Shown here one piece after another: positions 22,871 through 51,457 of a stretch of DNA of 64,000 nucleotides. This stretch comes from Octopus sinensis (taxonomy: Eukaryota): assembly GCF_006345805.1 (NCBI RefSeq), contig NC_042997.1, positions 113,212,001 through 113,276,000 on the forward strand, in the 5' to 3' direction. The notes below the pieces were generated by a model, which saw nothing but the letters and a program-made list of their open reading frames with translations, did not search any database and was not told the DNA's origin. The translations under genes were made by a program, and so were the position numbers. Numbering within the stretch: the first letter of the stretch is position 1; the number at the start of each line of letters is the position of its first letter.

Positions 22871-22916
22871 CTCGTAAATTCATCCAGGAATTCGCATTCT
22901 AAAATTACTTTGTCTC
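22871..22916 (-). CDS. EF-hand protein exon 5 (second half of EF4)
   Basis: Acceptor ttctgttcttatctgtttgcag, donor AG|gtatgt, 46 bp, phase 1 to 2; reads (R)DKVILECEFLDEFT and completes loop DADRDKVILECE. Confidence 0.85.
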
Positions 22917-23339
22917 CTGCAAACAGATAAGAACAGAATAAACTACAATGAAAATATAGTCTTCTTTCACTGCAGCAGCAGCAGCAGCAGTAGTAGTAGT
23001 TGTAGTAGTAGTAGTAGGAGGAGGAGGAGGAGGAGACATACCAGTCATAGTAGTGGTAGTCATAGTAGTAGCAATGGTAGTTGCTGTTACATAACTGCAG
23101 GTCGATTATAATTAGACAAACCTTACAGTCTTTTTATGTGACACCGGCACAGGTGCCAGTCAGGTGGCACGGGCATCAGCCATGACTATGATGTCACTCA
23201 GCTTGACGGGTCTTCACAAGCACAGTATATCCACCCAACATTTGAAGTGTGCTTTTTACATGCCAGTTACGAGACACTGTTATTGGCTGTGACTACAGTC
23301 TCACTTGGCTACATCTATACATCCTTCGTAAAGCATATA

Positions 23340-23894
23340 CAGGGTGGACCAAAATGATCTGACACATTTGGAGGTTTAATAAAAGCACAGAATAAGAAAT
23401 AATGAAAAGAAAAATTTTATTTTCTGAATGTACATATAATGCCATTTTATTTCATTAGGTTTTAAAAATTAAATCAGCTAAATGCTTCCCATCATTGTCA
23501 ACACACTGTTGGAGACGTTCATGAAAGCTATCGATAACTCTATGGATCATTTCTTCTGGAATGGTTGCTATTTCTACACAAATTGCACGTTTTAATTCAT
23601 CAATAGATTGAGGGCGATGACTGAATACTTTTGATTTTAAATATCTCCACAGGAAGAAATCACATTTCACCATTCCAGAAGAAATGATGTATAGAGTTAT
23701 CGATAACTTTCATGAACGTCTCCAACAGTGTGTTGACAATGATGGGAAGCATTTAGCTGATTTAATTTTTAAAACTTAATGAAATAAAATGGCATTATAT
23801 GTACATTCAGAAAATACAAATTTTCTTTTCATTATTTCTTATTTTGTGCTTTTATTAAGCCTCCAAATGTGTCAGATCATTTTGGTCCACCCTG
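23340..23894. mobile_element. Palindromic mariner-derived element (inverted duplication of the transposon 3' end)
   Basis: TA|CAGGGTGGACCAAAATGATCTGACAC ... GTGTCAGATCATTTTGGTCCACCCTG|TA; both arms carry the transposase C-terminus (CDFFLW.YLKSKV...IHRVIDSFHERLQQCVDNDGKHLADLIFKT). Confidence 0.9.
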
Positions 23895-24554
23895 TATATG
23901 TATGTGTATACTGTTCTGTCTTGGGAGGATCATTACGCCAATGCATTACTTCAGTTGGTTAAATATCTCATCAAATAATTGATTGTTTATTTAATGAGCT
24001 GGTTAATTGGTTGTTTGTTAATTGAAGTTCTTTTGTTAGATATTTAACCAGTTGACTTACAATAAAGAAGTGATATTGAACTGGTGCATGTGTTATCCTT
24101 ATTGGCATAATGACCCTCTGAAGACAACAAGGCTGGTTTCAACACATGAATTCACATCAAGGATCTTGCAAACCAAATACAAAGATGAAGTACACGTGCA
24201 CACACACACACACACTGATTCCAGAGAAATGTGTTGTTACTGGCAGGCCATTTCACATTGGCCTCTGATGACAATATTTTTGTCTCCGAATGCAAGGATT
24301 ATTTTTTTTTTCTTCAATTTCAAAAGGGGAATCTTTCCCGAAATGTAGAACTGTTAAACAACATATGTAAGATATCACAATATCTTTTCTCTTGGCGTTC
24401 ATTCACTGATATCATATTAACATATTTTGCTCAACTCCTCACCAGCATTACTCAAAGGTTTTTGCAAACTTCTCATTTTCCCAGACACACACACACACAC
24501 ATATATCTATATATGCATACAAAATGTATATGTGTGTGTATATATATCTCGTGA

Positions 24555-24865
24555 CCACGTGATCACGTGACCGACCAGGCTATCAGATGTAGTTACACAT
24601 CGCTGGTCACAATGCGCTTCACATTGTTTTAGCCTTCAAATGATGCCACCCCGCTGGCTAAGCGGGCAGGCTAACAGAAGAAAGAATGAGAGAAAGTTGT
24701 GGCGAAAGAGTACAGCAAGGATCGCCACCACCCATTGCCGGAGCCGCATGGAGCTTTAGGTGTTTTAGCTCAATAAACACTCACAACGCCCGGTCTGGGA
24801 ATCGAAACCGTGATCCTACGACCGCGAGTTCACTGCCCTAACCACTGAGTCATTGCGCCTCCACG
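24555..24865 (-). mobile_element. tRNA-derived SINE, family C-related
   Basis: Minus-strand head GGCGCAATGACTCAGTGGTTAGGGCAGTGAACTCGCGGTCGTAGGATCACGGTTTCGATTCCCAGACC. Confidence 0.8.
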
Positions 24866-25529
24866 TATATATATATATATATATCCTCATCATCATCATC
24901 ATATAATGTCCATGTTCCATGCTGGTATTGGTTGGATGGTTCGACAAGGATCCATTGAGTCCAAGGACTCCATTGTCTGCTTTGGCATGGTTTCTACAGC
25001 TGGATTCCTTTCCTAGTGCCAACCACTTTACAGAGTGTATTGGGTGCTTTTTATGTGGAACCAGTACCAGTGCTTTATATGTTTCACCAGCATGAAGAAG
25101 AATGAAGAAATTCTTCCATAAAACAAATTGCAGCTTTGGCAAAACACCAGGACATTAGATCAGTTTCTTTCACCTTGCAGATCAACTTCTGTGTCTGCCA
25201 GCTACTGGACCCACAAAATCTGCAATGGAGTGGACGGAGGGAGAAGGAAAACATGAAAAGGGTCAGCTCAAGAACACTTGGAACCAGACATTCCAGAAAG
25301 ACCTCAAATACACAAGAACTTGTTGGATAGAAATAGAAAGAAATGGAACCAATTGACTTTTCTGGAGACACTAATTCTAAGAACGATCTGATAATGCCTC
25401 TTAGTTATATCTTGTAAATTCAGTGCAAACTTAATAAATGGTTATAATTTTAGAAATATTGAATTTCTAAATGCCTCAAAGAGACATGAGCGGTGGTGGA
25501 GTGATAGAGTGGTTGTATACTGTCAACAT

Positions 25530-25860
25530 AACGTGACAGTCCCGTAAAGGGAATTACACCACTGCTATATAGCCCTAGGAAGCATCGATGCTTCCTGTCA
25601 GCTTTGACACATTTCCTGTGTCTTTATATTTGCGAAGGGGAGGCAATCACCCCCACCAGTTAGGCTTGCTACCCTGGACTGATGACGGGCAAGACCCAGA
25701 AACATGCATGTCTTCAGGTGCTAATCCTAGCTGGTGGAGGTGCTTACCTCCCCTTCACAAATATAAGGACACAGGAAATGTGTCAAAGCCAATAGGAAGC
25801 GTTGATGCTTCCTAGGGCTATATAGCAGTGGTGTAATTCCATTTACAGGACTGTCACGTT
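25530..25860. mobile_element. 331 bp palindromic element with a central hammerhead-like motif
   Basis: About 130 bp inverted arms (AACGTGACAGTCC ... GGACTGTCACGTT) around the loop region 25673-25718. Confidence 0.8.
25673..25718 (+). ncRNA. Minimal type I hammerhead ribozyme-like motif
   Basis: CCUGGA-CUGAUGA-CGGG-CAAGA-CCCA-GAAAC-AUGCAU-GUC^-UUCAGG: stem I CCUGGA/UUCAGG, intact core, palindromic stem III ACAUGCAUGU, GUC site at 25710-25712; C.A mismatch at the base of stem II. Confidence 0.65.
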
Positions 25861-25899
25861 GGTTATAATTTTAATCTTGTAAATCTTTTCAGTACTTAC

Positions 25900-26058
25900 T
25901 ATCCGCATCAAATGCTTCAAAGGTAAATCTCTCTTCATCGAAATCAATTGTTCCGCTGTCGTCGATATCCTCAGATGCAAATGCGATCTTTATTATTTGG
26001 GGTTGAACCAAACCCTTCCAACGAGCGGTATATTCCTCTTTACTTACTAGACCATCAG
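25900..26058 (-). CDS. EF-hand protein exon 4 (end of EF2, EF3, start of EF4)
   Basis: Acceptor tttgtcattatag, donor A|gtaagt, 159 bp, phase 1 to 1; reads (T)DGLVSKEEYTARWKGLVQPQIIKIAFASEDIDDSGTIDFDEERFTFEAFDAD with canonical loop DIDDSGTIDFDE. Confidence 0.92.
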
Positions 26059-27223
26059 CTATAATGACAAATACAGTAAATCAAAAAACATTATTCCAGA
26101 ATGTCGAATGAGATTTTAGTTATTTCCTAATGAGAACAGGTGGGATTATAGTTGCTGGTGGGGGGGGGGGCATAGTAACAGCCATGGGGATAGGCAAAAA
26201 GAAAAAGTCATCATTGGCTAAAAATTATTATATTTGTCAAGAAGCTTGCTTCCCATTCATGTGGCCTCAGGTTCAATCCCATTATGCAGCACCTTGGCCA
26301 AGTATCTTCTGTAGTCACATGCCAACCAAAGATTCACGAGTGGATTTGGTAGACAGAAACTGAAAGAAGACTATTACACACATGTACATGCACGCACGCA
26401 TGCACACTCACACACACATTGTAAGAGGAGGGTCCCAACTGCCATATTTTTCTAAGTCTTGTGTAATATTCTCAGATCACTAAGGCAGAAAGCTGGCAGA
26501 AATGTGGCGAAATGCTTAGCGGTATTTCATCCATCTTTACATTCTGAGTTCAAATTCTGCTGAGGTTGACTTTGCCTTTCATCCTTTTGGGGTTGATAAA
26601 TTAATTACCAGTTGCATACTGTGGTTAATCTAATCGACTGCCCCCCCCCCCCCAAATTTTGGGCCTTGTGTCTAGAGTAGAAAAGAATATTCTCAGGTCA
26701 CTCTATTTTTATTCACTCTATCTTTATTCATATACACAGTAATGTGTATGTATGTTTGTTTATAAGTAAGTATGTAGGAATGTATGAATATATATATATA
26801 TATGCACAAGTACAAACTTGTAACCAGTTCGCATATGCTGGAGGCATATTCAAGCCCAGAAGAAAGCCATTCATTATATTTTGCCATAGAGAATAATTCT
26901 AATCAGTATTGTAAGTATGTATGCCATTATTCAGTTTATTTCAAGATTTCTTGCCAATAGAGAAAGAGCTGGTTTCTAACCTAGATCCAAGGTTCCTTCA
27001 CTAGGATTTCAAAATCAACAACAGGGTATTTTTGTTTGTATGTATGTATGTATGTATGTATGTATGTATGTATGTATGTATGTATGTATGCATGTATGTA
27101 TGTATGTATGTATGTATGTATGTATGTATGCATGTATGTATGTTTATGTGCAGATTTCTATGTTTTGTTTTATATATGCATTCTCATGCATATAGTTGCA
27201 TATCTAGACATGCTCATATATAT

Positions 27224-27560
27224 TTAAATGATAAACTTCTGGAAAGTTTTACAGATTCTTACAGTTCCAGTGATGGATTGGATTTGTAGTCTTCGAATTA
27301 GCTTTCTACTTTCTGATTTTGAGAAGCCTAATTTCTCAATATTGGTATTTAGGCAGTGTGTTACATTTTCCAGGGCCCCATTAATTACAGGTATAAACCT
27401 GGACTTATAATCTGGATAGAGTAACTGCAGATTTCTCAATAGTTCGGCATAGGTATTCTCTTTTTCACTGATGTTCAGCTTTATGTTAACATCCCATGGG
27501 CAGCTAATTTCCATGCATACAAGCTTAGTATGATATACATAACTGGTCAGTGACTCCTCT
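27224..27560 (-). mobile_element. Dong/R4- or NeSL-like restriction-like endonuclease fragment
   Basis: MEISCPWDVNIKLNISEKENTYAELLRNL...FIPVINGALENV...LQIQSITGTVRICKTF. Confidence 0.75.
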
Positions 27561-28443
27561 GTGATGGTCAACAATCGACAACAAGGTGAGCTGCCACAGA
27601 TCACACTATCCCAAAGACTTGCGATCGGGGACCCCACTTGAACTTATATTTTCACTGAAATTCCGAACAGGAGTTCTTCACCCGAATAATGAACGACTGC
27701 TATGGCCACAGTGTCTATGCTATCGAATGAGCTTGTTCTCCCTGTGGGGGCATTTGTCAAACTTGCAAAGCTGGATAGTTGAGCTGCAAGCAGAAGCATT
27801 ATTTTTACCTGTTGGAGTGTTTGGGCTGACAACTGGATGTGGCCATCATTTGTGAAGTATGTGATGAACTCATTGAATGGAACTAGCTCAACCCACCCCA
27901 GGTGAATGCCATCACATGTATAAGTAAGTATATACATCTGCAGGTAGATAGATAAGTGGGTAGATAGCAAAACTAGGCACCAAACTGTTAATCCATTTAA
28001 TCCATTAATCATTAATTAACAAAGTTAACACTTTCATTAACAATTTAACTTTTAAGTTAACTTTGGAAATCATTATCAAACTATTTAGCTTCCATTAATT
28101 CAAGTCAACTTGAGTTAACTTCCATTAACTTCAATCCAATTGAAGTCAAGGGATTTTATATTTTTGGCACTTTTTAAAGGTGTTTTTAGGTGGTTCTAGA
28201 GCAAAAACTTTTTTTTTCTATAATAAAAATTAATGTTAATGGTTTATCAATAACTTCCGTTATATTTTTAAAGAATTAACTAATTAACGGTCATCAAAGT
28301 TAACTTTTTGGCTAATGGATTAACAGTTAACAAAGTTAACTTTGGAATTAGCAGTGCCCACCTTTGGTAGATAGGTAAGTGGGTAAGTAGGTAGATAGAA
28401 GGTTGGTATGGCAGTTATTAATTAGATTGGTTTTTGCACTTAC

Positions 28444-28583
28444 TGTTTTTATCAATTGCCTGGTGGAAATCTTCAACTTCTTTGTAAGTGATTTTGCCAT
28501 CATGGTTTAGATCTTTGCCTCTGAATTGTATTAATTTCTCTTCACTTGTAAGCTTTTCGGCAGCATAACCAATAGCACACCAA
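28444..28583 (-). CDS. EF-hand protein exon 3 (end of signal peptide, EF1, start of EF2)
   Basis: Acceptor ttttattccattag, donor A|gtaagt, 140 bp, phase 2 to 1; reads WCAIGYAAEKLTSEEKLIQFRGKDLNHDGKITYKEVEDFHQAIDKN with canonical loop DLNHDGKITYKE; joins exon 4 in frame to give DKNTDGLVSKEE. Confidence 0.9.
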
Positions 28584-28729
28584 CTAATGGAATAAAATTT
28601 ACAAAATTAAATTTTTGCACAATTATAATTTTAATTACAACTAGGTGCTACCTGTCATATAACTTTGAGAATATGCTTTTGCTGTCATGGGTGATATCAA
28701 AAAATATGGCATACATACAATTTTTTTTA

Positions 28730-29120
28730 TTTATTTGTTTCAGTCATTTGACTGCAGCCATGCTGGAGCACCGCCCTTAGTTGAGCAAATCAACCCTAGG
28801 ACTTATTCTTCGTAAGCCTGGTACTTATTCTATTAGTCTCTTTTGCCGAACTGTTAAGTTACAGTGACGTAAATACACCAGCATCGGTTGTCAAGAAATG
28901 TTGGGGGGACAAACACAGATAGACAGACACACATACACACTCAAACACACACACACATATACGATGGGCTCCTTTCAGTTCCGTCTAACAAATCCCCTCA
29001 CAAGGCTTTGGTCGGCCCAAGGCTATAGTAGAGGACACTTGCCCAAGATGCCAAACAGTGGGATTGAACCTGGAACCATGTGGTTGGTAAGCAAGCTACT
29101 TACCACACAGCCACTCTTCC
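28730..29120 (-). mobile_element. tRNA-derived SINE, family A (full length)
   Basis: Reverse complement of the family A consensus. Confidence 0.85.
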
Positions 29121-29134
29121 GCCTATAATATTTA

Positions 29135-29530
29135 TGGCGGCGAGCTGGCAAAAACATTAGCATACCTGGCAAAATGCTTAGCGGTATTTCGTCTGCTATT
29201 ATGTTCTGAGTTCAAATTCCACCGAGGTCAACTTTGCCTTTCATCCTTTCGGGGTCGATAAATAAAGTATCAGTTTCGCACTGGGGTCAATGTAATCGAC
29301 TTAATCTGTTTGTCTGTCCTTGTTTGTTCCCTCTGTGTTTAGCCCCTTGTGGGTAGTAAAGAAATAGGTATTTCATCTGCCATTATGTTCTGAGTTCAAA
29401 TTCCACCGAGGTTGACTTTGCCTTCCATCCTTTCGGGGGTCAATAAATTAAGTACCAGTTGCATACTGGGTTTGATCTAATCGACTGGCTTCTTCCCACA
29501 AAATTTTGGGCCTTGTGCCTAGAGTAGAAA
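29135..29530 (+). mobile_element. Family B SINE with a tandem partial duplication
   Basis: GGCGGCGAGCTGGCAAAAACATTAGC...GAGTTCAAATTCCACCGAGG; the internal block repeats at about 29370-29460. Confidence 0.8.
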
Positions 29531-29559
29531 TAGAAATGAATATTTATGATTTATCATCA

Positions 29560-32500
29560 ACATCAAATTCCCTGTTCTTGGGGTTACATTCTAGATGCTT
29601 CTGACTCAGTTGATGCTATAAGTTTCTGTTTTCTGTTATGCATAGCTGGGTTGTGGTGTTGTGACCTGTCCAGTCCTTGATGTGGTCAGACCTGGATTTT
29701 CTTTGCCCACCATTTTTACACCTTCCTTTACCTGTACCTTAATGGATGGTTTTAGACAAAGTGATATGTGGCAAGATATGTGACCATACCAGGAGGCAAG
29801 CTTTTGTCTTTTTACCTCTGCAAGGAGTGGTTCCTGTCTGCCAGGGAGGAATTACAACCGTGTTTCATGGTCTGCTACCACAACAGCTCCTTTATAGGAT
29901 CCAGTTAGCTCAAGACATCATCAGGAGGAACCACGTCCGGTTTCGGCCCCTACTCCCCTACCGTTTTGACATGGCGGGGCCCCTCCTTTCGGAGGTGTCT
30001 TCAGCTCTGGTGATGGGTACATGTCTTCTTCCTTCTTCTTTCTTCTGTTCCCTAGCCTCTTTGGTGTAGCGTCAATGAGTGTCAGCCGGCGACTGACTGA
30101 CTTGTCAAATTTTTCCCCTTTAAATACCTGCCACTAGGCTCCAGCAGGCAGCCCCAGCAAGTTGTCATGTGACACTGTCTCAGTGTCTGCCAGTGTATTT
30201 GTTAACTTGCTGCCTGACAAAGCTGTTCATTTTGTGCTTTGTGTATGGGATGTGTAGCAGCACCTTCTGAAGCACTTGTGCTTAAATGCCTGGATTCTTT
30301 GCTTCATGTCAGCTGTAAAAGTCCAGCTCTCACACCCACACAGAACAATTAAAGTCACTAAGGACTCGTACACCTTGAGTCTTGGAAAACTAATGAATTG
30401 GCTTTTCCATATGGTGTTCATCTCTATCATGGCAGCAGAAACCAAACTAGTCTTGTGATCTTCTTTTTGAGATCTGCTGTCCTTGGTGAAAGTGGATCCT
30501 AAGTACTTAAAGGTGTCTACTTTATCAAGTCTCTCTGTTCAGCCATGATGTTGCTTGCTGTGTTCTACTTGTTACTATTAACCAAGATCTTGCTCTTTTC
30601 TGGGCTGATCTCCATCCCATTTGATTCTGATACTTTATCAGTCTGATTGATGAACTCCTGTTGTTCTTCTTCATTGTTTCCAAGCAAGCCAATATCACCA
30701 TCAAAGCACAGGTAGGAAATGGGTTGCCCTCCTCTGGAAACAGAGGGGTAGAAGTCTTGGATTTTTTTCCCTGCAGGATGTTGAAAAGCACTGGGGAGAA
30801 GAGACATCCTTGTTGAACACCTACTTTTGACCTGAAGAATTCTCTGATGTTGTTGTTCAGGGGAACTACACTGTTTGAGTTTTCATACAGTGCATATCTG
30901 AGTGTGATTGTTGCCAGGGTCATGGATTGGCTCATGTGCCGGTGACACATGGAAAGCACCATTCGAGTGTGATCATTGCCAGTGTCACCTTATCGGCACA
31001 TGAAAAACAACATTCGAGCATGGTCGATGACAGTGCCACCAGACTGGCTCCCGTGCAGGTAGCACGTAAGAAGACGTCTTGAGCGTGGTCACTGCCAGAA
31101 CCGCCTGACTGGCCCTTGTGCCAGTGGAACGTAAAGGCACCCACTACACTCTCAGAGTGGTTGGCATTAGGAAGGGCATCCAGCTGTAGAAGCTTTCCCA
31201 GATCAGATTGAGCCTGGTGCAGCCTCTGGCTCACCAGTCCTCAGTCAAACTGTCCAACCCATGCCAGCATGGAAAGTGGACGTTAAACGATGAATGATGA
31301 TGCTTATATTACTTTGAGTAGGTTGTTTTTGCAGCTGTAATTCTTCATCATCTGCCACCACCTGCAGTCAAAGACCTTTTTGAAGTCGACGAAGTTGTGA
31401 CAGAGGCCAGGTTGGTACTACAAATGTTTCTCAGTGAGCAGTCTGGCATTTAAATACCTGCTCCCATAGTACTCCTTTTGGGCCTAAATCCTTCCTTTTC
31501 ACCTGCAAAGATTTCTTCAGCCTTCCCCTTAAATCTGCTTAGCAGAGCTCTTAGTAATGCTTTGCTGGGGTGGTTAATTAGGATGATTGTTCTGTAGTTC
31601 TGTGAGAGTCTTCAGCTGCCTTTCTTCAGAATGAGCATCATCAGTAATTGGGTCCACTTATTTGGTCACTGCTTCGTCTCCTATATCTTCTGACAAGTAT
31701 CTGTTAATGTCTTGATAAACTTTGGCCCTCTGTGATTTGGGTGCTCTGACAGGATCTTCTCCACTACTGGGGATTTCCCACCTTTGAGCTGGCACACTAC
31801 CTCTTTGACTTCTTCCCTGCGAATTGGAGCATCCCCAAGTTCTCTGTTGTTGTTGGTGGTGGTGGTGGTGTTGGTGGTGTTGGAATTGTCCAGGATGTTG
31901 ATAGCATGTCTAATTTCGTGATTGTACAGATCTTTGCAATTCTTAGATCGTCTTTTAATGACATCATTCTCATCTGCAAGGAACCAGCCTGTTTTGTCCT
32001 CAATATAGAGGTGGTGTGTTTCTTTGTTTTTGTTGGGATTTTGAGGGTTTCATAATGACCTTGTGGTTACCTTTCTTTATTCAAACTTTGATGATTTTGC
32101 ACTGGTCTGCTACCGATTTTTCTTTGGTTTCCCTCATTTTCTTGTTAACCTTTCTATTCACTGCATTGTATTGCTGACTTATTCCTAACCCGTCAGCATG
32201 GTTTACCTCAGGTTTTATCTTAAGTCACATAGGTCCAAGATGGCATCACTAATTCCATGGTTTCCTTTTTTCTTCTTCTCCTCTGCACTTTCAGAGCCAT
32301 TTTTTGAAGTGCTCCCTTGATGTCAGTCAGGGAGTTTATATCATCTTCCAGAAGGTTGAGGGCTGCAAACCTGTCACCCACTTTCACCTCAAACACTGTT
32401 GCAACCCTGGGATCTTTCAGTTTGTCTGCACCAAACCAAACACATGTGGCTCTTTTCTTATAGATCCTTTTCAGTTTAGGCCTCATGTTGATATTCACAT

Positions 32501-33115: not shown

Positions 33116-33454
33116 TAGAAGCATATAAATTGGTAGACGGAAACTGAAAGAAGCCTGTTGTATATATATATATATATGTGTGTGTGTTTGGGTCTGTGTT
33201 TGTCCCTCTAACATCGCTTGACAACCGATGCTGATGTGTTTATGTCTCCGTAACTTAGCGATTTAGCAATAGAGGCTGATAAAATAAGTACTAGGCTTAC
33301 AAAGAATAAGTCCTGGGGTCGATTTGCTCGACTAAAGGTGGTGCTCCAGCATGGCCACAGTCAAATGACTGAAACAAATAAAAGAATTTATTATATTATA
33401 AATGCAAAACAACACCACAGAGGAATCGACATAAGCTTAAATAATAAACCATGA

Positions 33455-33556: not shown

Positions 33557-34355
33557 ACAAGGGATTACTGCACATTGATCTTCTCTTCCCAGTAAATTAG
33601 CAGTGAACAGAACAATCGTTTGTTTTCTGGGCCTTGGCCAGTTTAGCGTATAGTGTTTTGACTGTGTCTATTATGGCATTTCAGTGGACCTTAGAAATGC
33701 TTGGTAGAGCCCATCTCCCCTCCAAGTATTCAGTTCCTTATTAAGTTTAGCCTACCAGTGGAAGCAGTTACCAGGGTATGGCTGAGAATGGTCTTGGAGC
33801 CACAAGTGAGAGTCAGGTGAGAACCAGTGTACCCATCCATTTCTTTACTACCCACAAGGGGCTAAACACAGAGAGGACAAACAAGGACAGACAAACGGAT
33901 TAAGTCGATTATATCGACCCCAGTGTGTAACTGGTACTTAATTTATCGACCCTGAAAGAATGAAAGGCAAAGTCGACCTCAGCAGAATTTGAACTCAGAA
34001 CATAATGGCAGACGAAATACCGCTAGACCTTTCGCCCGGTGTGCTAACGTTTCTGCCAGCTCGCTATGTTGCTGCCCAAAATCAAGGTATTCTCTCTACC
34101 CGAACACCCCGAATGTAATTTAACTTTTGTTAAATTTCTTGGGGCTTATACAAAATAATAAAACTAATATTTATCATCATCATCATCGTCATCATTTAAT
34201 GTCTGTTTTCCATGCTGGCATAGGTTGGACAGTTTGACTAGAACTGGCAAGGCCAGGCGCCATGCCAAACTCCATTTATTTGTTTTGGCATGGTTTTTAC
34301 TGCTGGATGCCCTTCCTAATGACAACCACTTTACAGTGTGTACTGGGTGCTTTTT

Positions 34356-38210: not shown

Positions 38211-38919
38211 TGTTATCTATAAAAGACCAACACAGTTTGTCTTTATGTGCGACAATGAAATCTTCTGTTGTTCAGTTTCTCCTACTTGCAGCCCAAGAAA
38301 CATATTTTCATTGATCAGCACAACCAGTCATCAGCAAAGATCAGCTGGCAACAACACAACAACCTGAGTAACAATAACAATATTAATAAGACTTTCAGTG
38401 AAAAAAATTATTTAATTTATTGTTGTATTTTGGGATGGTGATTATAATTTTTTGCCAAATAAACACATGTACTTCATCATCATTTAACATCCACTTTCCA
38501 TGCTAGCATGGGTTGGACGATTTGACTGAAGTCTGGCGAACCAGACTCCAATCTGATCTGGCAGAGTTTCTACAGCTGGATGCCCTTTCTAATGCCAACC
38601 ACTCCGAGAGTGTAGTGGGTGCTTTTATGTGCCACCGGCACGAAGGCCAGTTTGGTGGTACTGGCAATGGCCACGTCCAAATGGTGCTTTTTATGTGCCA
38701 CCTGCACTGGCGACAATCTTGCTCAAATGTTTCACGTGCCACCAGCACAAGTGCTAGTAAGGCGACGTGGTAACGATCACTCTCGAATGGTGTGCTTAAC
38801 GTGCCATTGGCACGAAGGCCAGTTTGTTGCTCTGGCAACAATCTTACTCATATGGTACTCTTAGCACTCCACTAGCAACGGATGCCAGTCACCGAGTCTG
38901 ATTTTGACTTTGATAATTT

Positions 38920-43342: not shown

Positions 43343-43394
<52 letters not shown>

Positions 43395-43397
<3 letters not shown>

Positions 43398-43925: not shown

Positions 43926-44059
43926 GTTACTTTGATGGCATGTAATAAATTTTGAAGGGAGGAAGAAGTTAATTACATCAACCCCAAGAAGAAAAGGCAA
44001 AGTTGACTTTGACAGGATTTGAACTCAGAACATTTAGTGTAAACTCTTGTGTGCTAAAT

Positions 44060-45375
44060 ATACTACCTATTGAAGCAAGGTGTAGAGTCGAAGTGCCTTA
44101 GAGTTAATCTAGCAAAAATCAAAGTCTTAGTAAGTAGGAGAGTAGACAAATCACAAATCCCTTCAGGCAGATGGCCCTGCATGATCTGTAGAAAAGGTAT
44201 AGGTAGAAACTCCATAAGATGTACCCAGTTCAAGCTATGCATGCATAAAAGGTGCTGCAAAATTAGAGGAAGATTAACTAGGAAAATAGTTTTTGTGTGT
44301 AGAAGGTGCACAGATATAATTAACACCGAAAATGTTCAGCAAATAGACTCCATCAAATGCCAGAGGGGAAAACTAGTAGTTGATAGCTTCCATTACCTAG
44401 GTGACCAAGTCAGTAGCAGGGGTGGATGCTCTGAGAGCGTAGCTGTGAGAATAAGAATAGGCTGGGCAAAGTTCAGAGAGCTCTTACCTCTGTTGCTAAC
44501 AAAGGGCCTCTCCCATAGAGTAAAAAAGCAGATTGTATAATGTCTGTGTGTGGACAGCTGTGCTACACAGCAGTGAAACATGGGCTGTGACAGCCGAGGA
44601 CATGTGTAGGCTTGAAAGAAATGAAGCCAGTATGCCTTGCTGGATGTGCAATGTCAGTGTGCATGCACGACAGAGTGTAAGCATCTTGAGAGAAAAGTCA
44701 GGCATAAGAGGCATCAGATGTGGTGTGCAAGAGAGATGGCTGCATTGGTATGGTCATGTGATATGTATGAATGAGGATGACTGTATGAAGAGGTGTCGCA
44801 CTTTAACAGTGGAGGGAACCTGTGGAAGAGGTAGACCCAGGAAGACATAGGATGAGATGGTGAAGTAGGACCTTCAAATACTGGGCCTCACGGAGTCAAT
44901 GACAAGTGACTGACACCTTTGGCAATATGCCGTGCTTGAGAAGACCCGTCACCCCAGGTTAAATTGTAGTCATGGCCGATGCCACTGTTGAGCATCTGCC
45001 ATGTAAAAAGCACCCTTTGCATAACTGGCAGCCATGTTGGTGGTACATAAAAAGCACCATTCAAACATTGGGCCTCACAGAGGCAGTGACAAATAACCGA
45101 GAACTCTGGTAATATACTGTGCTTGAGAAGACCTGACAAGCCAAGTGAGATTTTAGTTGTGACCAATGCTGGTGTAACGTAACTAGCAGCTTTGCTGGTG
45201 GCATGTAAAAATCTCCCACTACACTCTCGGAGTGGTTGGTGTTAGGAAGGGCATCCAGCTGTAGAAACCATGCCAAATCAGATTGAAACTTGGTGCAGCT
45301 CCCCAGCTGACCAGTTTTCACTGAAACTGTCAAATCCATGTCAGCATGGAAAACGGATGTTAAATGATGATTATG
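44060..45375 (+). mobile_element. 5'-truncated RTE LINE (ORF2 C-terminus and 3' UTR)
   Basis: LRVNLAKIKVL...WPCMICRKGIGRNSIRC...FHYLGDQVS...RIRIGWAKFRELLPLL...LHSSETWAVT...WYGHV.....GRGRPRKT. Confidence 0.9.
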
Positions 45376-45880
45376 ATAATGTCTCATTAGTGAGGCAACT
45401 CTGTAGGTGTTTTAGCCCCTTCCACCATGACACCAAAGCTGTTTGGGGCTACTGACTGATATGCCCAACAAAACCCCTGTATGTTATCTCGTAACCTTTG
45501 GTAGAATTGAAAGGGTGGAAAGAGAATCCTTTTAATGCTAAGAATAGAAAAACTACAACTGTGGGGTGTTTGTAGTTTCAATCAATCAGTTTATATTGAT
45601 TATCGGTCATAAATTTGGCATGGACAAAAGAGAATAAACATAAAGGACAAAGATGCTTCGTTATCAACGATTTAATTAGCTTACATGAGTTTCCCACCAA
45701 ATTTAATTGGTGTTCAACGTTCAGGTTTACAAACCGAACCTGTCACAGGACAAGAATAACAATACATATGGATTACTGTGGTAATAATTGGACATTTAGT
45801 TGACTGGGTTTGATTTCTACAAGCTGCTTACTGAGATGTTCACCTGGATTTATTTAATCCTTGAATATATATGTATAATA

Positions 45881-46334
45881 CAGGGTGCCCATAAATGACC
45901 ATTACAATTTGAAAAACTCAGGTGAGTTTATTGGAAAACAGAGGGTAACAAACAATAATAAATCTCTGAGCAAAGTATAAACAGTAGCTGCAACACATTG
46001 TGAAGTATATTTGACACTTAAATATGGCTAACCCCTAAGGGTGGATGCTACTGTAGCTTGAAGATGGGAAGGATGGCTTCCCTTTGCAAATACTGATAGG
46101 GCACAGAAAGTGTGTCAATAGCCAGCTGGAGGAGGTGTCCTCCTGGGGCTACAAGCTACAGTAGCATCCACCCTTAGGGGTTAGCCACATTTAAGTGGCA
46201 AATACACTTCACGAAAAGGGTAACAAAGTTTTATTAGAAACATCAGAACACTTCTATGTGGGCTCCATTAGTTGCATGCAACATATCTAGATGATGTGCT
46301 ATTTCTGTTGTAAAGATAATTTGTGGACACCTTG
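45881..46334. mobile_element. Tc1/mariner MITE containing a nested palindromic element (46001-46211)
   Basis: TA|CAGGGTGCCCATAAAT ... ATTTGTGGACACCTTG|TA; internal 60 bp inverted arms. Confidence 0.7.
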
Positions 46335-46952
46335 TATCATCATCATCATCATCATCATCGTTAAACGTCTGTTTTCCATATTGGTATGGGTTGGGTGATT
46401 TGACATGGAGCTGATAAGCTGGCGAGCTGCACCAGGATCCGATTGTCTGTATTGGTATGGTTCCTATAGCTAGATACCCTTCCTAATAATGCCAACCACT
46501 TTACAGAGTAGATGTTTTTTATGTATATAGGAGCACTCTGTCAGTTATGATGACGAGGGTCCCAGCTGATACGATCAACAGAACAGATTTCTCATAAAAT
46601 TAACGTGCAAGTGCCTGAGCACTCCACAGACACGTGTACCCTTAATGTAGTTCTCAGGGATATTCTGCATGAAACAGAGTGTGACAAGGCCAGCCCTTTG
46701 AAATACAGGTACTACTCATTTTTGCCAGCTGAGTAGACTGGGGCAACAAGAAATAAAGTGTCTTGCTCAAGGACACAACAAGTCACTGGGAATTGAAATC
46801 AAAACCTTATGATAGTGAGTCAAATGCCCGAACCACTAAGCCATGCACTTTCACATGTATGTATGTATGTATGTATGTATGTATGTATGTATGTATGTAT
46901 GTATGTATGTATGTATGTATGTATGTAGTATGTATGTATGTATGTATGTATG

Positions 46953-47014
<62 letters not shown>

Positions 47015-47015
<1 letters not shown>

Positions 47016-48047
47016 CTTTATATATATAAAACTGAGAATGTATGTCTGTCTGTCTATCTGTCTGTGTGTTTCCCTAAAACTTGAGAACTACACAACCAAT
47101 TTCATTCAAATTTTACACATGCCTTACTTAGGGTCCATGTAGTTTCATGGGCAAAAAAAAAGTTCAACTTCTTGCCTAGAGCAAGCCCATAGCAATATCA
47201 TATCTTCTCCACTATTTCAGTATTACGTGTTAAAAGTGAAACAAAAACATTTCTCTATTTTATGTCAGATACTTTCACTTTAACAATAAAAATAATAATA
47301 ACAATTGAATTATATGTAGAAAGTAATAATTAAAATCAAACTAAAGTATAATATAATCGTAACATAACAAAAGTAAAAATAGCAAATGGTATAAAATTGC
47401 ATCAATGACTTGAACTTGAATAAGTGGTTTCACATGAATGGGAATAAATTATAAAATTAGCGTGCAGAAATAGTCCAGATGGATAATAAAAAATTAAATT
47501 AAAGAAAAGACTATTGTCTATAAAGTATACAATGTAGAGAAAAAAGATTTGAACACCTGGAGGAAAGTACCATCGAAAAGTGTCTTGGTGCGACTATGAA
47601 AGGTATCTAACCAGAGGCGGTAAATTCGCCACAATAGAAGCAAGGTTCGAGTCAACGGAGCGTGCAAGGGAGTACTCAACTTGAACTTGCAAAGTGGAAA
47701 TATTTTATTTTTACCTTTATATCTGGGATGTAGGATGTGCCGGATAAAAATTTAAAATGCCCCCCCCCCCGAAGTTGAGGTAGGCTGGATTGTAGCCATA
47801 CTTCTATACAAGAGGGAGGACAAGATACAATTGATCAAAATTGCAAGAGACGGGCTTACAATTCCAGTCTGTTATATATTTTAAGTATTGTTATCACTAG
47901 TGATATCAAGATATAACTTTGTATTTTGTATTTTATGTGTAGATGTATATATATATATAGATGTACATGTAATATATGTACACATATATATATACACATA
48001 TATACATGCACTAGCACTATGACCCGGCAACGACGGTCATAATGCTA

Positions 48048-48048
<1 letters not shown>
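47015..48048 (+). mobile_element. Non-autonomous Helitron
   Basis: A|TC 5' end, subterminal hairpin ATGACC-CGGCAACGAC-GGTCAT (48019-48040), CTAG|T 3' end; this is the canonical Helitron structure and AT target. Confidence 0.75.
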
Positions 48049-48120
<72 letters not shown>

Positions 48121-48353
48121 CATACATATTAATTATTGAGTTAGAAAAGAGTGAGATCTAATGGCTACAAATTAATTTATTAATTACTTAACGTATTCAC
48201 CTACAATTGTTTCATTTTACAAGCAAAATTAAAATTACAAAACATATATAAATATATGATTATGCATTTTAAAATACCTTGGATGGAAACTCATCAGGGT
48301 GTAGAAGCATTACATGAGGATATGTTTGGAATACTCAGAATGTATAGATATAT

Positions 48354-48386
<33 letters not shown>

Positions 48387-49812
48387 TTTGGTCTTTGCTC
48401 CATTGACTCTAAGGCCTTTTGGTTCTAAACCTTGCTTCCACACCTGAAATTTCTTTTCTAGTTCTCATAGTGATTCTGCTATGAGGGCCAGATCATCAGC
48501 ATAGAGGAGCTCCCAGGGGCAACCTGTCTCAAATTCCTCTGTTATTGCCTGGAGGACTATGATGAATAAAAGGGGACTGAGGGCTGATCCATGGTGGAGC
48601 CCTACTTCTACTTATTTGAAACTGGTACTTATTTGAAAATGAAATAACTGAAGCAAATATGAAATGGAGTACCTTGCTCAACAACACAATGTTCTGCATA
48701 ATCCATCTGATTGTAGATAAAGCAATTAAGAGTATGAAACCAGGAAAAGCTGGCCATCAGGAATCACTGCCGAGATGCTTAAAACATCTGGTGGTGTGGG
48801 CTATGGCCTAGTCACCCTTGGCTATATGCCTTAACGTTAGTATAAATCTAAAGGCAGCAAGCTGGCAGAATTGTTAGCACACTGAACGAAATGCTTAGCT
48901 ACATCCATCGGTCTACACTTGTGAGTTCAAATCCTGCCAAGGTCTACTTTGCCTTTTATCCTTTTGGGGTTGATAAAATAAGTACCAGTTGAGAACTGGA
49001 GGTGATGTAATTAATTGTCCCCCTCCTCCAAAATTTTGGTGCCTACATTAGAAAGGATTATTATAAACCTAAATCATTGTTATTAATCATTCTTCTGGGG
49101 CCAATAAAATATGTATCAGAAATATATCATTGACATTTTAATCCAATAGTTTTGCATCAAGGATTAGTCTCATTGACTGAAGAATAAACCCACGGTGATT
49201 CTAATCCTTGAAACATTTTCAATTTGCGAATGATGGTATATATTTTCAGTAAGCAGTCATTGCATTTGTGAAAGTTACAAACTTCACAACACCCAGCATT
49301 TCTCTACTCTTGAGCCATGATGTCCTCATAGTAAGGCATTAAACCTAGGGGTGATCTCAAAGCAGTGTGGACCCTAATTGTGGAGGGAAGAAGAATATGC
49401 CTCATCATGGACGTGGCAGACACACATGGGAGAAAGATTGAAGCAGAAAGCAAAGAACAAATCCTCAGCTTGTAGTAAAACAAAATAGTTGCTGCTTGGG
49501 GTTGGAGCGGTTACAACTGTGTCTGGTTTGGTGTGAGAGATGCAAGGAGATAACTGAGGACAAAAAGCAAAAATATTACAAAATGAATGAATAAATAAAA
49601 CTGGATATTTTTTGATAAGCACTGTTTGAGAGAATGGTATTGTGGAAAGGTTCTGAAACTGTTGAGAACACTGCTTGGCAGCTGGTGAAGATGCTACTTT
49701 GCACAAAAGGCTGTCTTTTGTCCCATCAGTATACTGATGACAAACCAAACATTTATTCTGTCATCCTTTATCAAAAAGCTGTCATTCAAAAGAAATAAAA
49801 TGTTATACTAAC

Positions 49813-49862
49813 TTAATCATAAGCAATATGGTAGCTACAGAGATCTGGAACTGTAGAAATGT
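49813..49862 (-). CDS. EF-hand protein candidate exon 2 (hydrophobic core of the signal peptide)
   Basis: Strong acceptor taatttttgctttcag, donor AA|gttagt, 50 bp, phase 0 to 2; reads TFLQFQISVATILLMI(N); phases link exon 1 and exon 3 without a frameshift. Confidence 0.5.
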
Positions 49863-50259
49863 CTGAAAGCAAAAATTATTAAGAATATTAATTTGTTTTT
49901 ACAAAAATTGTTTTATTCACTGCTCTCTTTTCTTCTTTCACTTTGTCTAAAAGTTTCACGTTTCATACACTTATAATACTAATACAGTGTGGGGTTATAA
50001 ATAAATATGTATATGGACAGCACTGCATCTATACATTAAAATAGACATATATATATTTATATGTCACTCCCCTTGTTCTGTCTCTTTCCCTCTTTTTCTT
50101 CTCCTCCCTTGTTCCCCCTCTTTCTTTCTCTCTTCCTCCGTCTCTCCTCTTCCTCCGTCCCTCCTCTCCCACATTTCTCTGCCTCTCAGACCTTATACCC
50201 CACTTGACCTGTCCCTTTCCCTCTCCTGCTTCTCTCTTCATCTGTCCCTTTCTCCTTTT

Positions 50260-51120
50260 TGTGCTCACGTGACCAGCTAGCTACCACTGCCTTTCGCATC
50301 AAGTAGTTGGCGTGACCACATGTATGTGTTTGTGCTCCGTTTGCCTTCAGGCACTTATTCCACAGCCAGCCTATACTCTCCTCGTCCTGTCGAAAGACGC
50401 TTGTCCTGACGTCCTGGTTTTGTTATGATTGTTTTTACGTTATTTTGTATTTTTATCCGTGCTATCTTTATTGTTTTTACGTATTTTTGAATTTTTTTTT
50501 TCGAGTAACATCGTCCGTTTTTTCCGTCACCATGTTGTATACTTTCGAGGTTTTCTTCCAAAGAATCTAATGCGATTGGCTTAGATTTCCCTTGGCGGGC
50601 TGCCCAGATTGGAGCAATCTCAAGATTAATCAGCCAAAATTGCGAAGATGATCTGGTTCTTGACTGATGACTGAGAGCTTCGAAAGTCCCGTCTGTGTGT
50701 TTTTTTTTTGTCGTCTTCAAAATGTTTCACGTTCTTGTCCCAGTTTGTGTTTTTTTAACGTTTACCTATATATATATATATATATATGTAAAAGTATATC
50801 GTATGTCGTATATATACATATATATTTGTATTTATGTGCTTTGTGAGTATATTCCACTGATGAAGGCAGAGTATTTCTTATGCAGAGTCAGAAGTCTGGG
50901 ATCTGGAATTATCCAGTAATTTTTTTGCTAGTTTATTTTGTCTTTTTGTCTTCTCTCCTGGTGCTTTATGAATATTTAATGTGGTTTTAGAGTCAAGTTT
51001 TGACTGCTATTTCCAGTGTGGTGGTATCTCTTAGATACCCTAAATTATAATTTTAAATAATTATTACCTTTGGAGGTTTTTATTTCCATACTGGCCACCT
51101 GATAAGATTGGTATTTAAAT
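50260..51120 (+). mobile_element. Penelope-type non-autonomous repeat with decayed hammerhead cores
   Basis: CTGATGAAGGCAGAG at 50857 and CTGATAAG near 51099; resembles a repeat class I recall from Octopus. Confidence 0.45.
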
Positions 51121-51403
51121 ATCGATCCAATCAACTTTGGTGGAATTTGGACTCAGAACTTAGCAGCAGACGAAATACCACTAAGCATTTCGTCCGGCGT
51201 GCTAATGTTTCTGCCAGCTCACCGCCTTAAAAGCATTGAATATTAGCTTATGCAAAGTTCAGCTTTGTATACGGGAATCAGGGTAATTATTTTGAGACAT
51301 TTTTTGAGACTGAAGGAGTGTCTTAGATACCATTAAATACAGGTTAATAATATCTTGTATTACCAATAAAAAAAAGAAAATGAAGTTTTAGAAAAAAACA
51401 TAC

Positions 51404-51457
51404 CAAAAAATGGTTCTTTGTCTTCAGTTGACTTCGATAGTTATTTAAGCAAATCAT
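51404..51457 (-). CDS. EF-hand protein candidate exon 1 coding part
   Basis: Only ATG downstream of the TATA/initiator; reads MICLNNYRSQLKTKNHFL; donor TTG|gtatgt, phase 0. Confidence 0.5.

What the first reader, a model, noticed from the sequence alone, without database searches (positions are those of the whole stretch)
22871..51457. Hidden gene for a probably secreted four-EF-hand calcium-binding protein, invisible in the ORF track
Seen: phase-compatible GT-AG exons give MICLNNYRSQLKTKNHFL-TFLQFQISVATILLMIN-WCAIGYA^AEKLTSEEKLIQFRGK[DLNHDGKITYKE]VEDFHQAI[DKNTDGLVSKEE]YTARWKGLVQPQIIKIAFASE[DIDDSGTIDFDE]ERFTFEAF[DADRDKVILECE]FLDEFT... (about 150 aa). Established: the 12-residue loops fit the EF-hand consensus, with EF4 having Gly6 replaced by Lys. 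Inference: a signal peptide plus four EF-hands and no visible ER-retention motif resembles molluscan secreted EF-hand shell-matrix proteins (insoluble matrix shell protein 5-like, recalled rather than searched). In a shell-less octopod such a protein would need another extracellular role, for example statolith, stylet, egg case, saliva or mucus. EF4 also holds a single unpaired Cys in the mature region.
Basis: partly seen in the sequence, partly recalled or inferred. Interest (0 to 1): 0.7.

Follow-up and report, generated by a model that had tools for sequence, protein, structure and literature searches.

The report
Octopus secreted four-site calcium-binding protein gene
The window holds a real five-exon octopus gene for a small, acidic, probably secreted protein with four calcium-binding EF-hand loops. 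[quoted passage not shown]

Summary
The gene is real. Five minus-strand exons with canonical GT-AG borders encode 167 aa. They lie between a conserved TATA-like box and a conserved AATAAA signal. RefSeq models the same five exons in Octopus bimaculoides (LOC128250466). The O. vulgaris assembly holds them at about 99% DNA identity.

Two details of the finding were wrong. The last exon does not stop at 22871 but reads on to a stop codon at 22818-22816. That tail holds a second conserved Cys, so the EF4 Cys is not the only one in the mature protein.

The protein has a 42-aa hydrophobic leader, four canonical 12-residue EF loops and no KDEL-like end. Its nearest full-length relatives are small secreted EF-hand proteins of gastropods, bivalves, a brachiopod and a bryozoan. 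[quoted passage not shown]

The family has unusual loop spacing of 8 / about 22 / 8 residues. In the AlphaFold model one short helix joins EF1 to EF2, and another joins EF3 to EF4. The best PDB match is lanmodulin, and it is weak.

Between Octopus species the mature protein evolves at dN/dS of about 1.4, yet all 16 Ca-ligand positions are kept.

Secretion and tissue of expression remain untested. I rate this a new member of a known kind, of moderate interest.

The parts
51536..51547 (-). TATA-like box (TTATTTATAAAG), about 80 nt upstream of the ATG. There is no ATG between it and the start codon.
   Evidence: It is identical in the window, O. vulgaris and O. bimaculoides. About 550 nt upstream of exon 1 is 90-98% conserved against O. 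bimaculoides, compared with 72-84% in the intron just downstream.
51404..51457 (-). Exon 1 coding part (MICLNNYRSQLKTKNHFL), with A at -3 of the ATG and donor GTATGT.
   Evidence: It is 100% identical at protein level and 53/54 nt identical to O. bimaculoides, against 80% in the flanks (Fisher p = 2e-4). RefSeq LOC128250466 uses the same exon.
49813..49862 (-). Exon 2 (50 nt; TFLQFQISVATILLMI plus the first two bases of codon N35). It supplies most of the hydrophobic core of the leader.
   Evidence: Borders are tttcag| and |gttagt. A stop codon lies 5 codons upstream in frame, so an upstream exon is needed (read). It is 48/50 nt identical to O. bimaculoides.
28444..28583 (-). Exon 3 (140 nt). 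It holds the end of the leader (WCAIGYA, probable cleavage after A42 at 28562), the entering helix, EF1 (28513-28478) and the first 3 1/3 codons of EF2 (28453-28444).
   Evidence: Borders are cattag| and |gtaagt.
25900..26058 (-). Exon 4 (159 nt). It holds the rest of EF2 (26058-26033), the 22-residue linker, EF3 (25969-25934) and the first 3 1/3 codons of EF4 (25909-25900).
   Evidence: Introns 3 and 4 cut EF2 and EF4 at the same loop position and phase (after the first base of loop codon 4). This is the mark of an internal duplication of an EF1-EF2-like unit.
22816..22916 (-). Exon 5 coding part (101 nt). It holds the rest of EF4 (22916-22891, with Cys142 at 22896-22894), the exiting helix, a tail with Cys162 (22836-22834) and the TAA stop (22818-22816).
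22759..22764 (-). Polyadenylation signal AATAAA, about 50 nt after the stop codon.
   Evidence: It is conserved in O. bimaculoides at the matching place.

Best explanation
This is a complete, functional octopus gene with five coding exons spread over 28.6 kb. The introns are full of transposon debris.

The product is a 167-aa precursor. A 42-residue N-terminal leader (basic start, hydrophobic core, G-Y-A|A end) takes the protein into the secretory pathway. What remains is an acidic protein of about 14.5 kDa (pI 4.5) made almost entirely of four canonical EF-hand calcium sites, with no ER-retention signal.

The sites are laid out as EF1-8 aa-EF2-22 aa-EF3-8 aa-EF4:
- EF2 and EF3 form an ordinary EF-hand pair.
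- EF1 sits on the entering helix of EF2, and EF4 sits on the exiting helix of EF3. One 11-residue helix therefore serves two sites at each end.

At extracellular (millimolar) calcium all competent sites would be filled. I therefore infer that it acts as a calcium-loaded structural, buffering or matrix-binding protein, not as a calcium switch. [quoted passage not shown]

In Octopus the leader and the 16 metal-ligand positions are held constant while the rest of the surface changes quickly.

Shown: gene structure, EF-hand content, family relationship, loop spacing and evolutionary rates. Inferred: cleavage and secretion, calcium occupancy, and pairing of EF1 with EF4. Unknown: tissue and the extracellular partner.
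For: Gene structure
- Exons, splice sites, frame and stop.
- The same five exons occur in O. bimaculoides RefSeq LOC128250466 and in the O. vulgaris assembly.
- TATA-like box and AATAAA are conserved. Promoter and exon 1 are conserved above background.

EF-hands and family
- Pfam EF-hand_1/5/7/6 hit above their cut-offs.
- An exhaustive phmmer search of 1.84 billion representatives found only the Octopus cluster below 1e-30. The hits that match most of the query's length are mollusc, brachiopod and bryozoan secreted proteins.
- The profile search and alignments show the leader aligned to the relatives' signal peptides and all four loops in register.
- hhalign: 98.2% probability, E 3.4e-14, over 115 columns.
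- The 8-residue spacer is a sharp mode, with 199 occurrences among the retrieved proteins.

Structure
- The AlphaFold2 model built with the family alignment has pLDDT 84, and above 90 over the EF region. Single helices 68-78 and 121-131 lie between the loops.
- EF2-EF3 aligns to canonical EF pairs (RASEF pair rmsd 1.5 Å over 63 columns).

Evolution
- 16/16 ligand positions are identical between species even though 36/120 mature residues differ (P = 0.002).
- The mature protein is 125 aa with pI 4.5, 29 acidic residues and 2 Cys.
Against: - No transcript, proteomic or signal-peptide-predictor evidence could be obtained here.
- The leader is atypically long. It has 24 residues before the hydrophobic core, and its 19-residue hydrophobicity of 1.78 lies in the transmembrane range. 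It may therefore stay uncleaved.
- dN/dS of the mature part is about 1.4 and cannot be distinguished from neutrality. Exons 3-5 are no better conserved than their introns. This would also fit relaxed constraint.
- Position 6 of EF4 is Lys in the window and Gln in O. bimaculoides, and position 6 of EF3 is Arg in O. bimaculoides. Some sites may therefore be weak.
- The original clam IMSP5 sequence was never retrieved. The link to it rests on NCBI's '-like' names on relatives.
Confidence: 0.6

Rival explanations
1. The same protein is not released. The long N-terminal hydrophobic segment is an uncleaved signal anchor (type II: N-terminus in the cytosol, EF-hand module in the lumen or outside the cell). 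The protein would then work as a membrane-tethered calcium buffer or chaperone of the ER, Golgi or cell surface, in the manner of CREC proteins such as Cab45.
For: - The Kyte-Doolittle 19-residue mean is 1.78 at residues 25-43, above the usual 1.6 transmembrane threshold.
- The hydrophobic span is about 18-26 residues and is preceded by R8, K12 and K14.
- The leader, including the 24-residue N-terminal extension that the relatives lack, is almost invariant between species (dN 0.04 against 0.16 for the mature part). That is more conservation than a disposable signal peptide usually shows.
Against: - The relatives have short classical signal peptides at the aligned position.
- The segment ends in a textbook small-x-small site (G-Y-A|A, and G-Y-A|V in O. 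bimaculoides).
- There is no KDEL/HDEL or other known retention signal.
Confidence: 0.2
2. The gene is a lineage-restricted leftover of the shell-matrix toolkit. It is drifting under relaxed constraint in a shell-reduced animal and has little or no present function.
For: - dN/dS is 1.4 for the mature part. It is not different from 1 (p = 0.28) but clearly above 0.5 (p = 0.005).
- Coding exons 3-5 are no more conserved than the flanking introns.
- Gly6 is lost in EF4 in both species and in EF3 in O. bimaculoides.
- No orthologue outside Octopus was found among 1.84 billion representatives.
Against: - The reading frame, all eight splice sites, the start codon, the TATA-like box and the poly(A) signal are intact in three genomes.
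- All 16 metal-ligand positions are unchanged although 30% of mature residues differ (P = 0.002).
- Both mature Cys are kept.
- Exon 1 and the promoter are conserved well above background.
Confidence: 0.12
3. It is a cytosolic EF-hand sensor. Exon 1 and most of exon 2 would be 5' UTR, and translation would start at Met33 (MINWCAIGYAAEKL...), giving a protein without a signal sequence.
For: Met33 is in frame and conserved. No transcript data were available to fix the start site.
Against: - The exon 1 ATG is the first ATG after the conserved TATA-like box and has A at -3.
- The exon 1 reading frame is 100% conserved at protein level, with its single nucleotide change synonymous.
- RefSeq starts at M1.
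- All full-length relatives carry signal peptides.
Confidence: 0.03

Closest known systems
[quoted passage not shown] Biomphalaria XP_055898399, Physella XP_059162582, Lingula XP_013386799, Aplysia LOC101845039, Magallana 'LPS1-beta isoform X2')
   Same: - An N-terminal signal-type segment.
- A module of about 105 residues with four EF loops spaced 8 / about 20-24 / 8.
- An aromatic residue or Trp after EF2.
- Small size (about 140-165 aa) and acidic composition.
- An in-register profile match at 98.2%.
   Different: - Only about 22-29% identical.
- The Octopus leader has an extra 24-residue N-terminal extension encoded by a separate exon.
- Two Octopus-specific Cys (EF4 position 11 and the tail).
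- The conserved HLD-HD / YW / EHLHG motifs of the gastropod-bivalve group are absent.
- No shell to go into.
- The family itself is functionally and structurally uncharacterised. The names are automatic.
Lanmodulin (LanM) of Methylorubrum extorquens, PDB 8fns
   Same: - A small secreted (periplasmic in LanM) protein with four EF loops set much closer together than in calmodulin, so that single short helices connect neighbouring sites.
- LanM pairs EF2 with EF3 and EF1 with EF4 (PMC10232371). The Octopus layout suggests the same pairing.
- It is the best Foldseek PDB hit.
   Different: - The match is weak (E 4e-3, TM 0.33/0.45, rmsd 5.3 Å).
- LanM has 12-13-residue spacers between all neighbouring loops. 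The Octopus protein has 8 / 22 / 8.
- LanM has Pro at loop position 2. The Octopus protein has L, K, I and A.
- LanM is bacterial and lanthanide-selective. Nothing suggests that here.
Calmodulin / troponin C-type four-EF-hand proteins
   Same: The same 12-residue loop consensus. The central EF2-EF3 unit aligns to a canonical EF pair.
   Different: Those proteins are cytosolic, have no leader, and have two separate lobes with spacers of about 24-25 residues. Here EF1 and EF4 share helices with the central pair, and the protein is routed to the secretory pathway.
CREC family (reticulocalbin, calumenin, Cab45) and the pearl-oyster extracellular EF-hand protein EFCBP (Huang et al. 2007, cited in PMC13425148)
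   Same: EF-hand proteins that carry a signal sequence and act in the secretory pathway or outside the cell, some of them in shell formation.
   Different: CREC proteins are about 300+ aa with six or seven normally spaced EF-hands and often an HDEL-type end (own knowledge). EFCBP has two EF-hands (own knowledge). None of these appeared among the best sequence or fold hits.

Membership tests
EF-hand superfamily (Pfam PF00036 / PF13202 / PF13499) | 12-residue loop with oxygen ligands at positions 1, 3, 5 and 12, and a hydrophobic residue at position 8, flanked by helices | tested here: met
   Four loops: DLNHDGKITYKE, DKNTDGLVSKEE, DIDDSGTIDFDE and DADRDKVILECE. Pfam scores are 39.3, 38.9 and 31.8 bits, above the cut-offs. 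Helices flank every loop in the AF2 model.
IMSP5-like / LPS1-alpha-like secreted twin-loop EF-hand family (Lophotrochozoa) | Four loops in the layout loop-8 aa-loop-about 20-24 aa-loop-8 aa-loop | tested here: met
   Octopus spacers are 8 / 22 / 8. The same module was found by regex in 59 retrieved proteins, and the 8-aa spacer is a sharp mode.
IMSP5-like / LPS1-alpha-like secreted twin-loop EF-hand family (Lophotrochozoa) | Significant full-module sequence similarity to family members | tested here: met
   phmmer E 4.5e-8 to Biomphalaria P0028 over query residues 31-150. hhalign of the Octopus pair against 20 non-Octopus members gives 98.2%, E 3.4e-14, over 115 columns.
IMSP5-like / LPS1-alpha-like secreted twin-loop EF-hand family (Lophotrochozoa) | Cleavable N-terminal signal peptide | tested here: inconclusive
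   The hydrophobic segment aligns with the relatives' signal peptides and ends in G-Y-A|A. It is long and transmembrane-like (KD19 1.78). No SignalP-type tool was available.
Insoluble matrix shell protein 5 proper (Ruditapes philippinarum shell matrix) | Direct sequence similarity to the clam IMSP5 peptide | not tested
   The clam sequence was not returned by any search. The link is only through NCBI '-like' names on Biomphalaria, Physella and Lingula relatives.
Insoluble matrix shell protein 5 proper (Ruditapes philippinarum shell matrix) | Physical presence in a calcified matrix | not testable with these tools
   This needs proteomics of Octopus statolith, stylet or other secretions.
Lanmodulin | All adjacent EF loops separated by 12-13 residues (PMC10232371) | tested here: not met
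   Spacers are 8, 22 and 8.
Lanmodulin | Pro at loop position 2 in at least one EF hand (PMC10232371) | tested here: not met
   Position 2 is L, K, I and A in the window and V, K, L and K in O. bimaculoides.
Lanmodulin | Three-helix-bundle fold with metal sites on the periphery | tested here: inconclusive
   LanM 8fns is the top Foldseek hit, but only at E 4e-3, TM 0.33/0.45. Model coordinates could not be inspected for loop pairing.
Calmodulin-type cytosolic four-EF-hand proteins | Two lobes of canonically spaced EF pairs and no signal sequence | tested here: not met
   The EF1-EF2 and EF3-EF4 spacers are only 8 residues. An N-terminal hydrophobic leader is present.
CREC family (reticulocalbin / calumenin / Cab45) | Six or seven EF-hands in a protein of about 300+ aa, often with a C-terminal HDEL-type signal (own knowledge) | tested here: not met
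   The protein has 167 aa, four loops and a C-terminus of ...GLTTK. No CREC protein is among the listed best PDB sequence hits, and none was seen among the named or inspected database hits.

The most novel reading that the evidence does not exclude
The Octopus gene is the cephalopod representative of a structurally undescribed class of extracellular EF-hand proteins. In this class a canonical EF2-EF3 pair is flanked by two extra sites that share its helices. The resulting compact four-metal module has a topology that parallels bacterial lanmodulin. In a lineage that has nearly lost its shell, the gene has been redeployed to a new secreted role (saliva or venom, egg coat, statolith or stylet matrix, mucus) and is under diversifying selection on its surface while the metal sites are kept.
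Probability: 0.25. Interest if true: 0.55.

Novelty: new member of a known kind. Interest (0 to 1): 0.35.

Why it matters
- **Annotation.** The result gives a corrected gene model: the true start in exon 1 and the true stop at 22816. The only public O. vulgaris model (A0AA36EWL9) is mis-joined at both ends.
- **Family.** The Octopus gene now belongs to a named but unstudied lophotrochozoan family that turns up in shell-matrix annotation. No cephalopod outside Octopus turned up in these searches.
- **Structure.** The family's 8-residue loop spacing has no close match among solved structures (no Foldseek hit at E <= 1e-3). A solved structure would add a new EF-hand arrangement.
- **Evolution.** The pattern of a conserved leader and ligands with a fast-changing surface is the one seen in secreted effector and matrix proteins. 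It would make a tidy test case for what happens to shell-toolkit genes after shell reduction.

None of this overturns current views.

Tried and rejected
- **Spliced window protein as query.** I tried to hand it to the exhaustive search and the structure predictor. I used the O. bimaculoides orthologue P0002 instead.
- **Single-sequence AlphaFold of P0002.** This was useless (pLDDT 35). Only the 27-sequence family alignment gave a confident model.
- **Paralogous exons in the window.** tblastn found none.
- **Retrieving the original clam IMSP5.** A profile of the two-module relatives did not return it.
- **Literature.** Searches for IMSP5, the LOC identifiers, and EF-hand shell-matrix proteins in cephalopods or Lymnaea gave nothing specific to this family.
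Rejected, because both orthologues read through it.
- **O. vulgaris N-terminus (MAFITNSH...).** Rejected as a mis-join. Its two exons lie about 27 kb upstream of the conserved exon 1, outside the window.
- **Lanmodulin, calmodulin-type and CREC membership.** All rejected, because defining features are not met.
Full report

Yes, with two corrections. On the minus strand the quoted peptides are present:
- exon 3 (WCAIGYAAEKL...AIDKN-)
- exon 4 (-DGLVSKEE...FDAD-)
- the start of exon 5 (-DKVILECEFLDEFT)
- the two small 5' pieces (MICLNNYRSQLKTKNHFL at 51457-51404; TFLQFQISVATILLMI at 49862-49813)

The exact exon borders are 51457-51404, 49862-49813, 28583-28444, 26058-25900 and 22916-22816. Every intron starts with GT and ends with AG. 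The joined frame is open for 167 codons.

The first correction concerns the 3' end. Both Octopus homologues read through it (FTRYVL...). In the window the frame runs on to ...RYVLIDNPPKSYCGLTTK and a TAA at 22818-22816.

The second correction follows from the first. The missed tail holds a second Cys (C162), which O. bimaculoides also has. 'A single unpaired Cys' is therefore wrong: the mature part has two conserved Cys, C142 in EF4 and C162.

**2. Independent support for the gene model.**

A word-indexed search of 5.8 billion proteins returned only two hits:
- O. vulgaris A0AA36EWL9: 224 aa, 99% identical over the shared part.
- O. bimaculoides RefSeq 'uncharacterized protein LOC128250466': 163 aa, 79% identical.

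I fetched both loci. The O. bimaculoides locus (L001) is collinear with the window. It has the same five exons with canonical splice sites.

The O. vulgaris locus (L002) is 98.3-99.1% identical to the window over its long collinear blocks, apart from one 95% block. The window therefore comes from O. vulgaris or a very close relative. L002 contains the same exon 1. The O. vulgaris protein model ignores that exon and instead joins two exons about 27 kb further upstream, outside the window. It also splices away the last codons. I regard it as mis-annotated.

The remaining gene signals are all conserved:
- A TATA-like box (TTATTTATAAAG, 51547-51536) lies about 80 nt before the ATG and is identical in all three genomes.
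- No other ATG lies between the box and the start codon.
- The ATG has A at -3.
- An AATAAA lies about 50 nt after the stop in both species.

Exon 1 is 53/54 nt identical to O. bimaculoides, against 80% in its flanks (p = 2e-4). The 550 nt upstream of it are 90-98% identical.

No paralogous exons are in the window. The introns are filled with LINE, SINE-like and mariner-like debris. This explains why no long ORF marks the gene.

**3. What the protein is.**

Pfam EF-hand_1, EF-hand_5, EF-hand_7 and EF-hand_6 all hit above their cut-offs. The four loops are:

| Loop | Window sequence | Note |
|---|---|---|
| EF1 | DLNHDGKITYKE | canonical |
| EF2 | DKNTDGLVSKEE | canonical |
| EF3 | DIDDSGTIDFDE | canonical |

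The putative mature protein (residues 43-167) has 125 aa, 14.5 kDa, pI 4.5 and 29 Asp+Glu. It has no N-glycosylation sequon and no KDEL-like end.

The leader has three parts:
- a basic N-terminal part (R8, K12, K14)
- a hydrophobic core (ISVATILLMINWCAIGYA)
- a small-x-small end (G-Y-A|A)

Its 19-residue Kyte-Doolittle mean peaks at 1.78. That is high enough for a membrane anchor, so cleavage is likely but not certain.

**4. Relatives.**

An exhaustive phmmer search with the O. bimaculoides orthologue against 1.84 billion cluster representatives found only its own cluster below 1e-30. No orthologue outside Octopus is in that library.

Most of the 243 weaker hits are multi-EF-hand proteins hit piecemeal. 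The hits that match most of the query's length are secreted proteins of:
- gastropods (Biomphalaria, Bulinus, Lymnaea, Haliotis)
- bivalves (Ostrea, Solemya, Mactra, Dreissena)
- a bryozoan

A profile search added many more: Physella tandem genes, Aplysia, Elysia, Plakobranchus, Sinanodonta, Tegillarca, Saccostrea, Magallana, Mytilus, Mercenaria, Pomacea and the brachiopod Lingula.

[quoted passage not shown] Others are named 'calcium-binding protein LPS1-alpha/beta-like'.

A profile-profile comparison of the two Octopus sequences against 20 non-Octopus single-module members gives 98.2% probability, E 3.4e-14. It covers 115 aligned columns running from the end of the leader through all four loops.

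I could not retrieve the original clam IMSP5. Membership in 'IMSP5' in the strict sense is therefore not tested.

**5. Anatomy of the module.**

The family shares a peculiar spacing: loop-8 residues-loop-about 20-24 residues-loop-8 residues-loop. Among all proteins retrieved, an 8-residue spacer is a sharp mode with 199 occurrences. It is distinct from the 11-12-residue mode of bacterial proteins and from the broad canonical mode at 20-25.

AlphaFold2 failed with the single sequence (pLDDT 35). With the 27-sequence family alignment it gave pLDDT 84, and above 90 over the EF region. The model shows:
- helix ...-58, loop 1, helix 68-78, loop 2, helix 88-95
- helix 101-111, loop 3, helix 121-131, loop 4, helix 141-152

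One 11-residue helix is thus both the exiting helix of EF1 and the entering helix of EF2. The same holds for EF3 and EF4.

A family profile aligns its EF2-linker-EF3 stretch to ordinary EF pairs of Entamoeba CaBP1 and calmodulin. Foldseek superposes 63 columns on the RASEF EF pair at 1.5 Å. The centre is therefore a canonical pair, with an extra site grafted on each outer helix.

No PDB chain matches the whole model at E <= 1e-3. The best is lanmodulin (8fns; E 4e-3; TM 0.33/0.45). Lanmodulin is defined by:
- 12-13-residue spacers
- a three-helix bundle with peripheral metal sites
- EF2/3 and EF1/4 pairing
- Pro at loop position 2 (PMC10232371)

The Octopus protein shares the idea of close-packed loops and probably the pairing. 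It fails the spacing and proline criteria. It is an analogue, not a member.

The gene structure reflects an internal duplication. Introns 3 and 4 cut EF2 and EF4 at the same place and phase, after the first base of loop codon 4.

**6. Evolution.**

I compared the window with O. bimaculoides by the Nei-Gojobori method:

| Region | dN | dS | ω |
|---|---|---|---|
| Leader (codons 1-42) | 0.041 | 0.041 | 0.99 |
| Mature part (codons 43-162) | 0.156 | 0.109 | 1.43 |

For the mature part, ω is not different from 1 (p = 0.28). It is well above 0.5 (p = 0.005) and 0.2 (p = 1.5e-8). Exons 3-5 are no more conserved than their introns.

Yet all 16 ligand positions (1, 3, 5 and 12 of each loop) are identical although 36 of 120 mature residues differ (hypergeometric P = 0.002). 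Both Cys are kept.

The combination of a frozen leader, promoter and ligands with a fast-changing surface argues against simple decay. It is the pattern common in secreted matrix, immune, reproductive or venom proteins. With only two divergent sequences, positive selection cannot be shown.

**7. Most likely mechanism.**

The leader inserts the nascent chain into the ER, with the basic N-terminus in the cytosol. Signal peptidase probably cuts after A42. The 14.5-kDa acidic module is released without a retention signal.

Outside the cell calcium is millimolar, so the competent sites are filled. I infer that the protein acts as a calcium-loaded folded unit that binds or organises a calcium-rich matrix or buffers local calcium. 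It would not act as a switch. This is an inference from EF-hand chemistry and from the family's association with shell matrices.

C142 (loop 4, position 11) and C162 in the tail could form an internal disulfide that pins the tail to EF4, or could link the protein to a partner. The tail is modelled at low confidence, so this is open.

The tissue is unknown.

I give about 0.6 to 'secreted, calcium-loaded IMSP5-like protein'. The rivals are a tethered lumenal or surface protein (0.2), a drifting relic (0.12) and a cytosolic protein starting at Met33 (0.03).

**8. Novelty and verdict.**

The gene is not new to databases. It is unnamed and unstudied there, and its O. vulgaris model is wrong at both ends.

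It is a new, divergent and lineage-restricted member of a known but uncharacterised family. The family-wide twin-loop architecture has no close solved structure and is the most interesting by-product.

Interest is moderate (0.35). The finding is mostly right and well reasoned, but it overturns nothing.

Noticed in passing
L002 10001-10801 (O. vulgaris OX597814.1), outside the window; window 51404-51457: The public O. vulgaris protein A0AA36EWL9 joins two exons about 27 kb upstream of the conserved exon 1 to this gene, and it also splices off the true C-terminus. The conserved exon 1 (MICLNN...) is present in that assembly but unused. This is probably an annotation mis-join.
   Followed up: partly
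window 52131-53444 and 44072-45377: Two copies of a LINE-type retrotransposon fragment about 1.3 kb long and about 78% identical. ORFs in and next to the copies show reverse-transcriptase-like sequence. The copies lie in opposite orientation on either side of exons 1 and 2.
   Followed up: partly
window, about 20 places (e.g. 63217-63406, 56184-56364, 38474-38635, 34182-34330, 16068-16264, 5223-5367): A SINE-like element of about 150-200 bp is scattered on both strands. It equals the first 180 nt or so of the plus-strand sequence of the LINE fragment at 52131-53444. The same element recurs many times in the O. bimaculoides locus.
   Followed up: partly
window 50064-50767: A 704-bp stretch in intron 1 is absent from the O. 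vulgaris assembly at the matching place. It is single-copy within the window, and its first third is CT-rich low-complexity sequence.
   Followed up: partly
window 22965-23085: A compound trinucleotide microsatellite ((CTC)n, (TAC)n and (GCT)n runs on the minus strand) sits in intron 4, only about 50 nt upstream of the exon 5 acceptor.
   Followed up: no
window 4025-4426 (+): An ORF whose translation looks like the N-terminal part of a Tc1/mariner-type transposase. This was judged by eye only.
   Followed up: no
P0003, P0007 and many 175-aa metagenome proteins: Bacterial signal-peptide proteins (named members in related hit lists are from Planctomycetota, Acidobacteriota and Pseudomonadota) also carry tandem EF loops at short fixed spacing, with spacer modes at 11-12 residues. 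This is reminiscent of lanmodulin-like layouts. They crowd the weaker hit lists.
   Followed up: no
Physella acuta LOC131946158-131946160 and LOC1319459xx: The small single-module family members share contigs in Physella (two contigs each carry several members), so the family seems to expand locally in gastropods. The Octopus loci examined hold a single copy.
   Followed up: no
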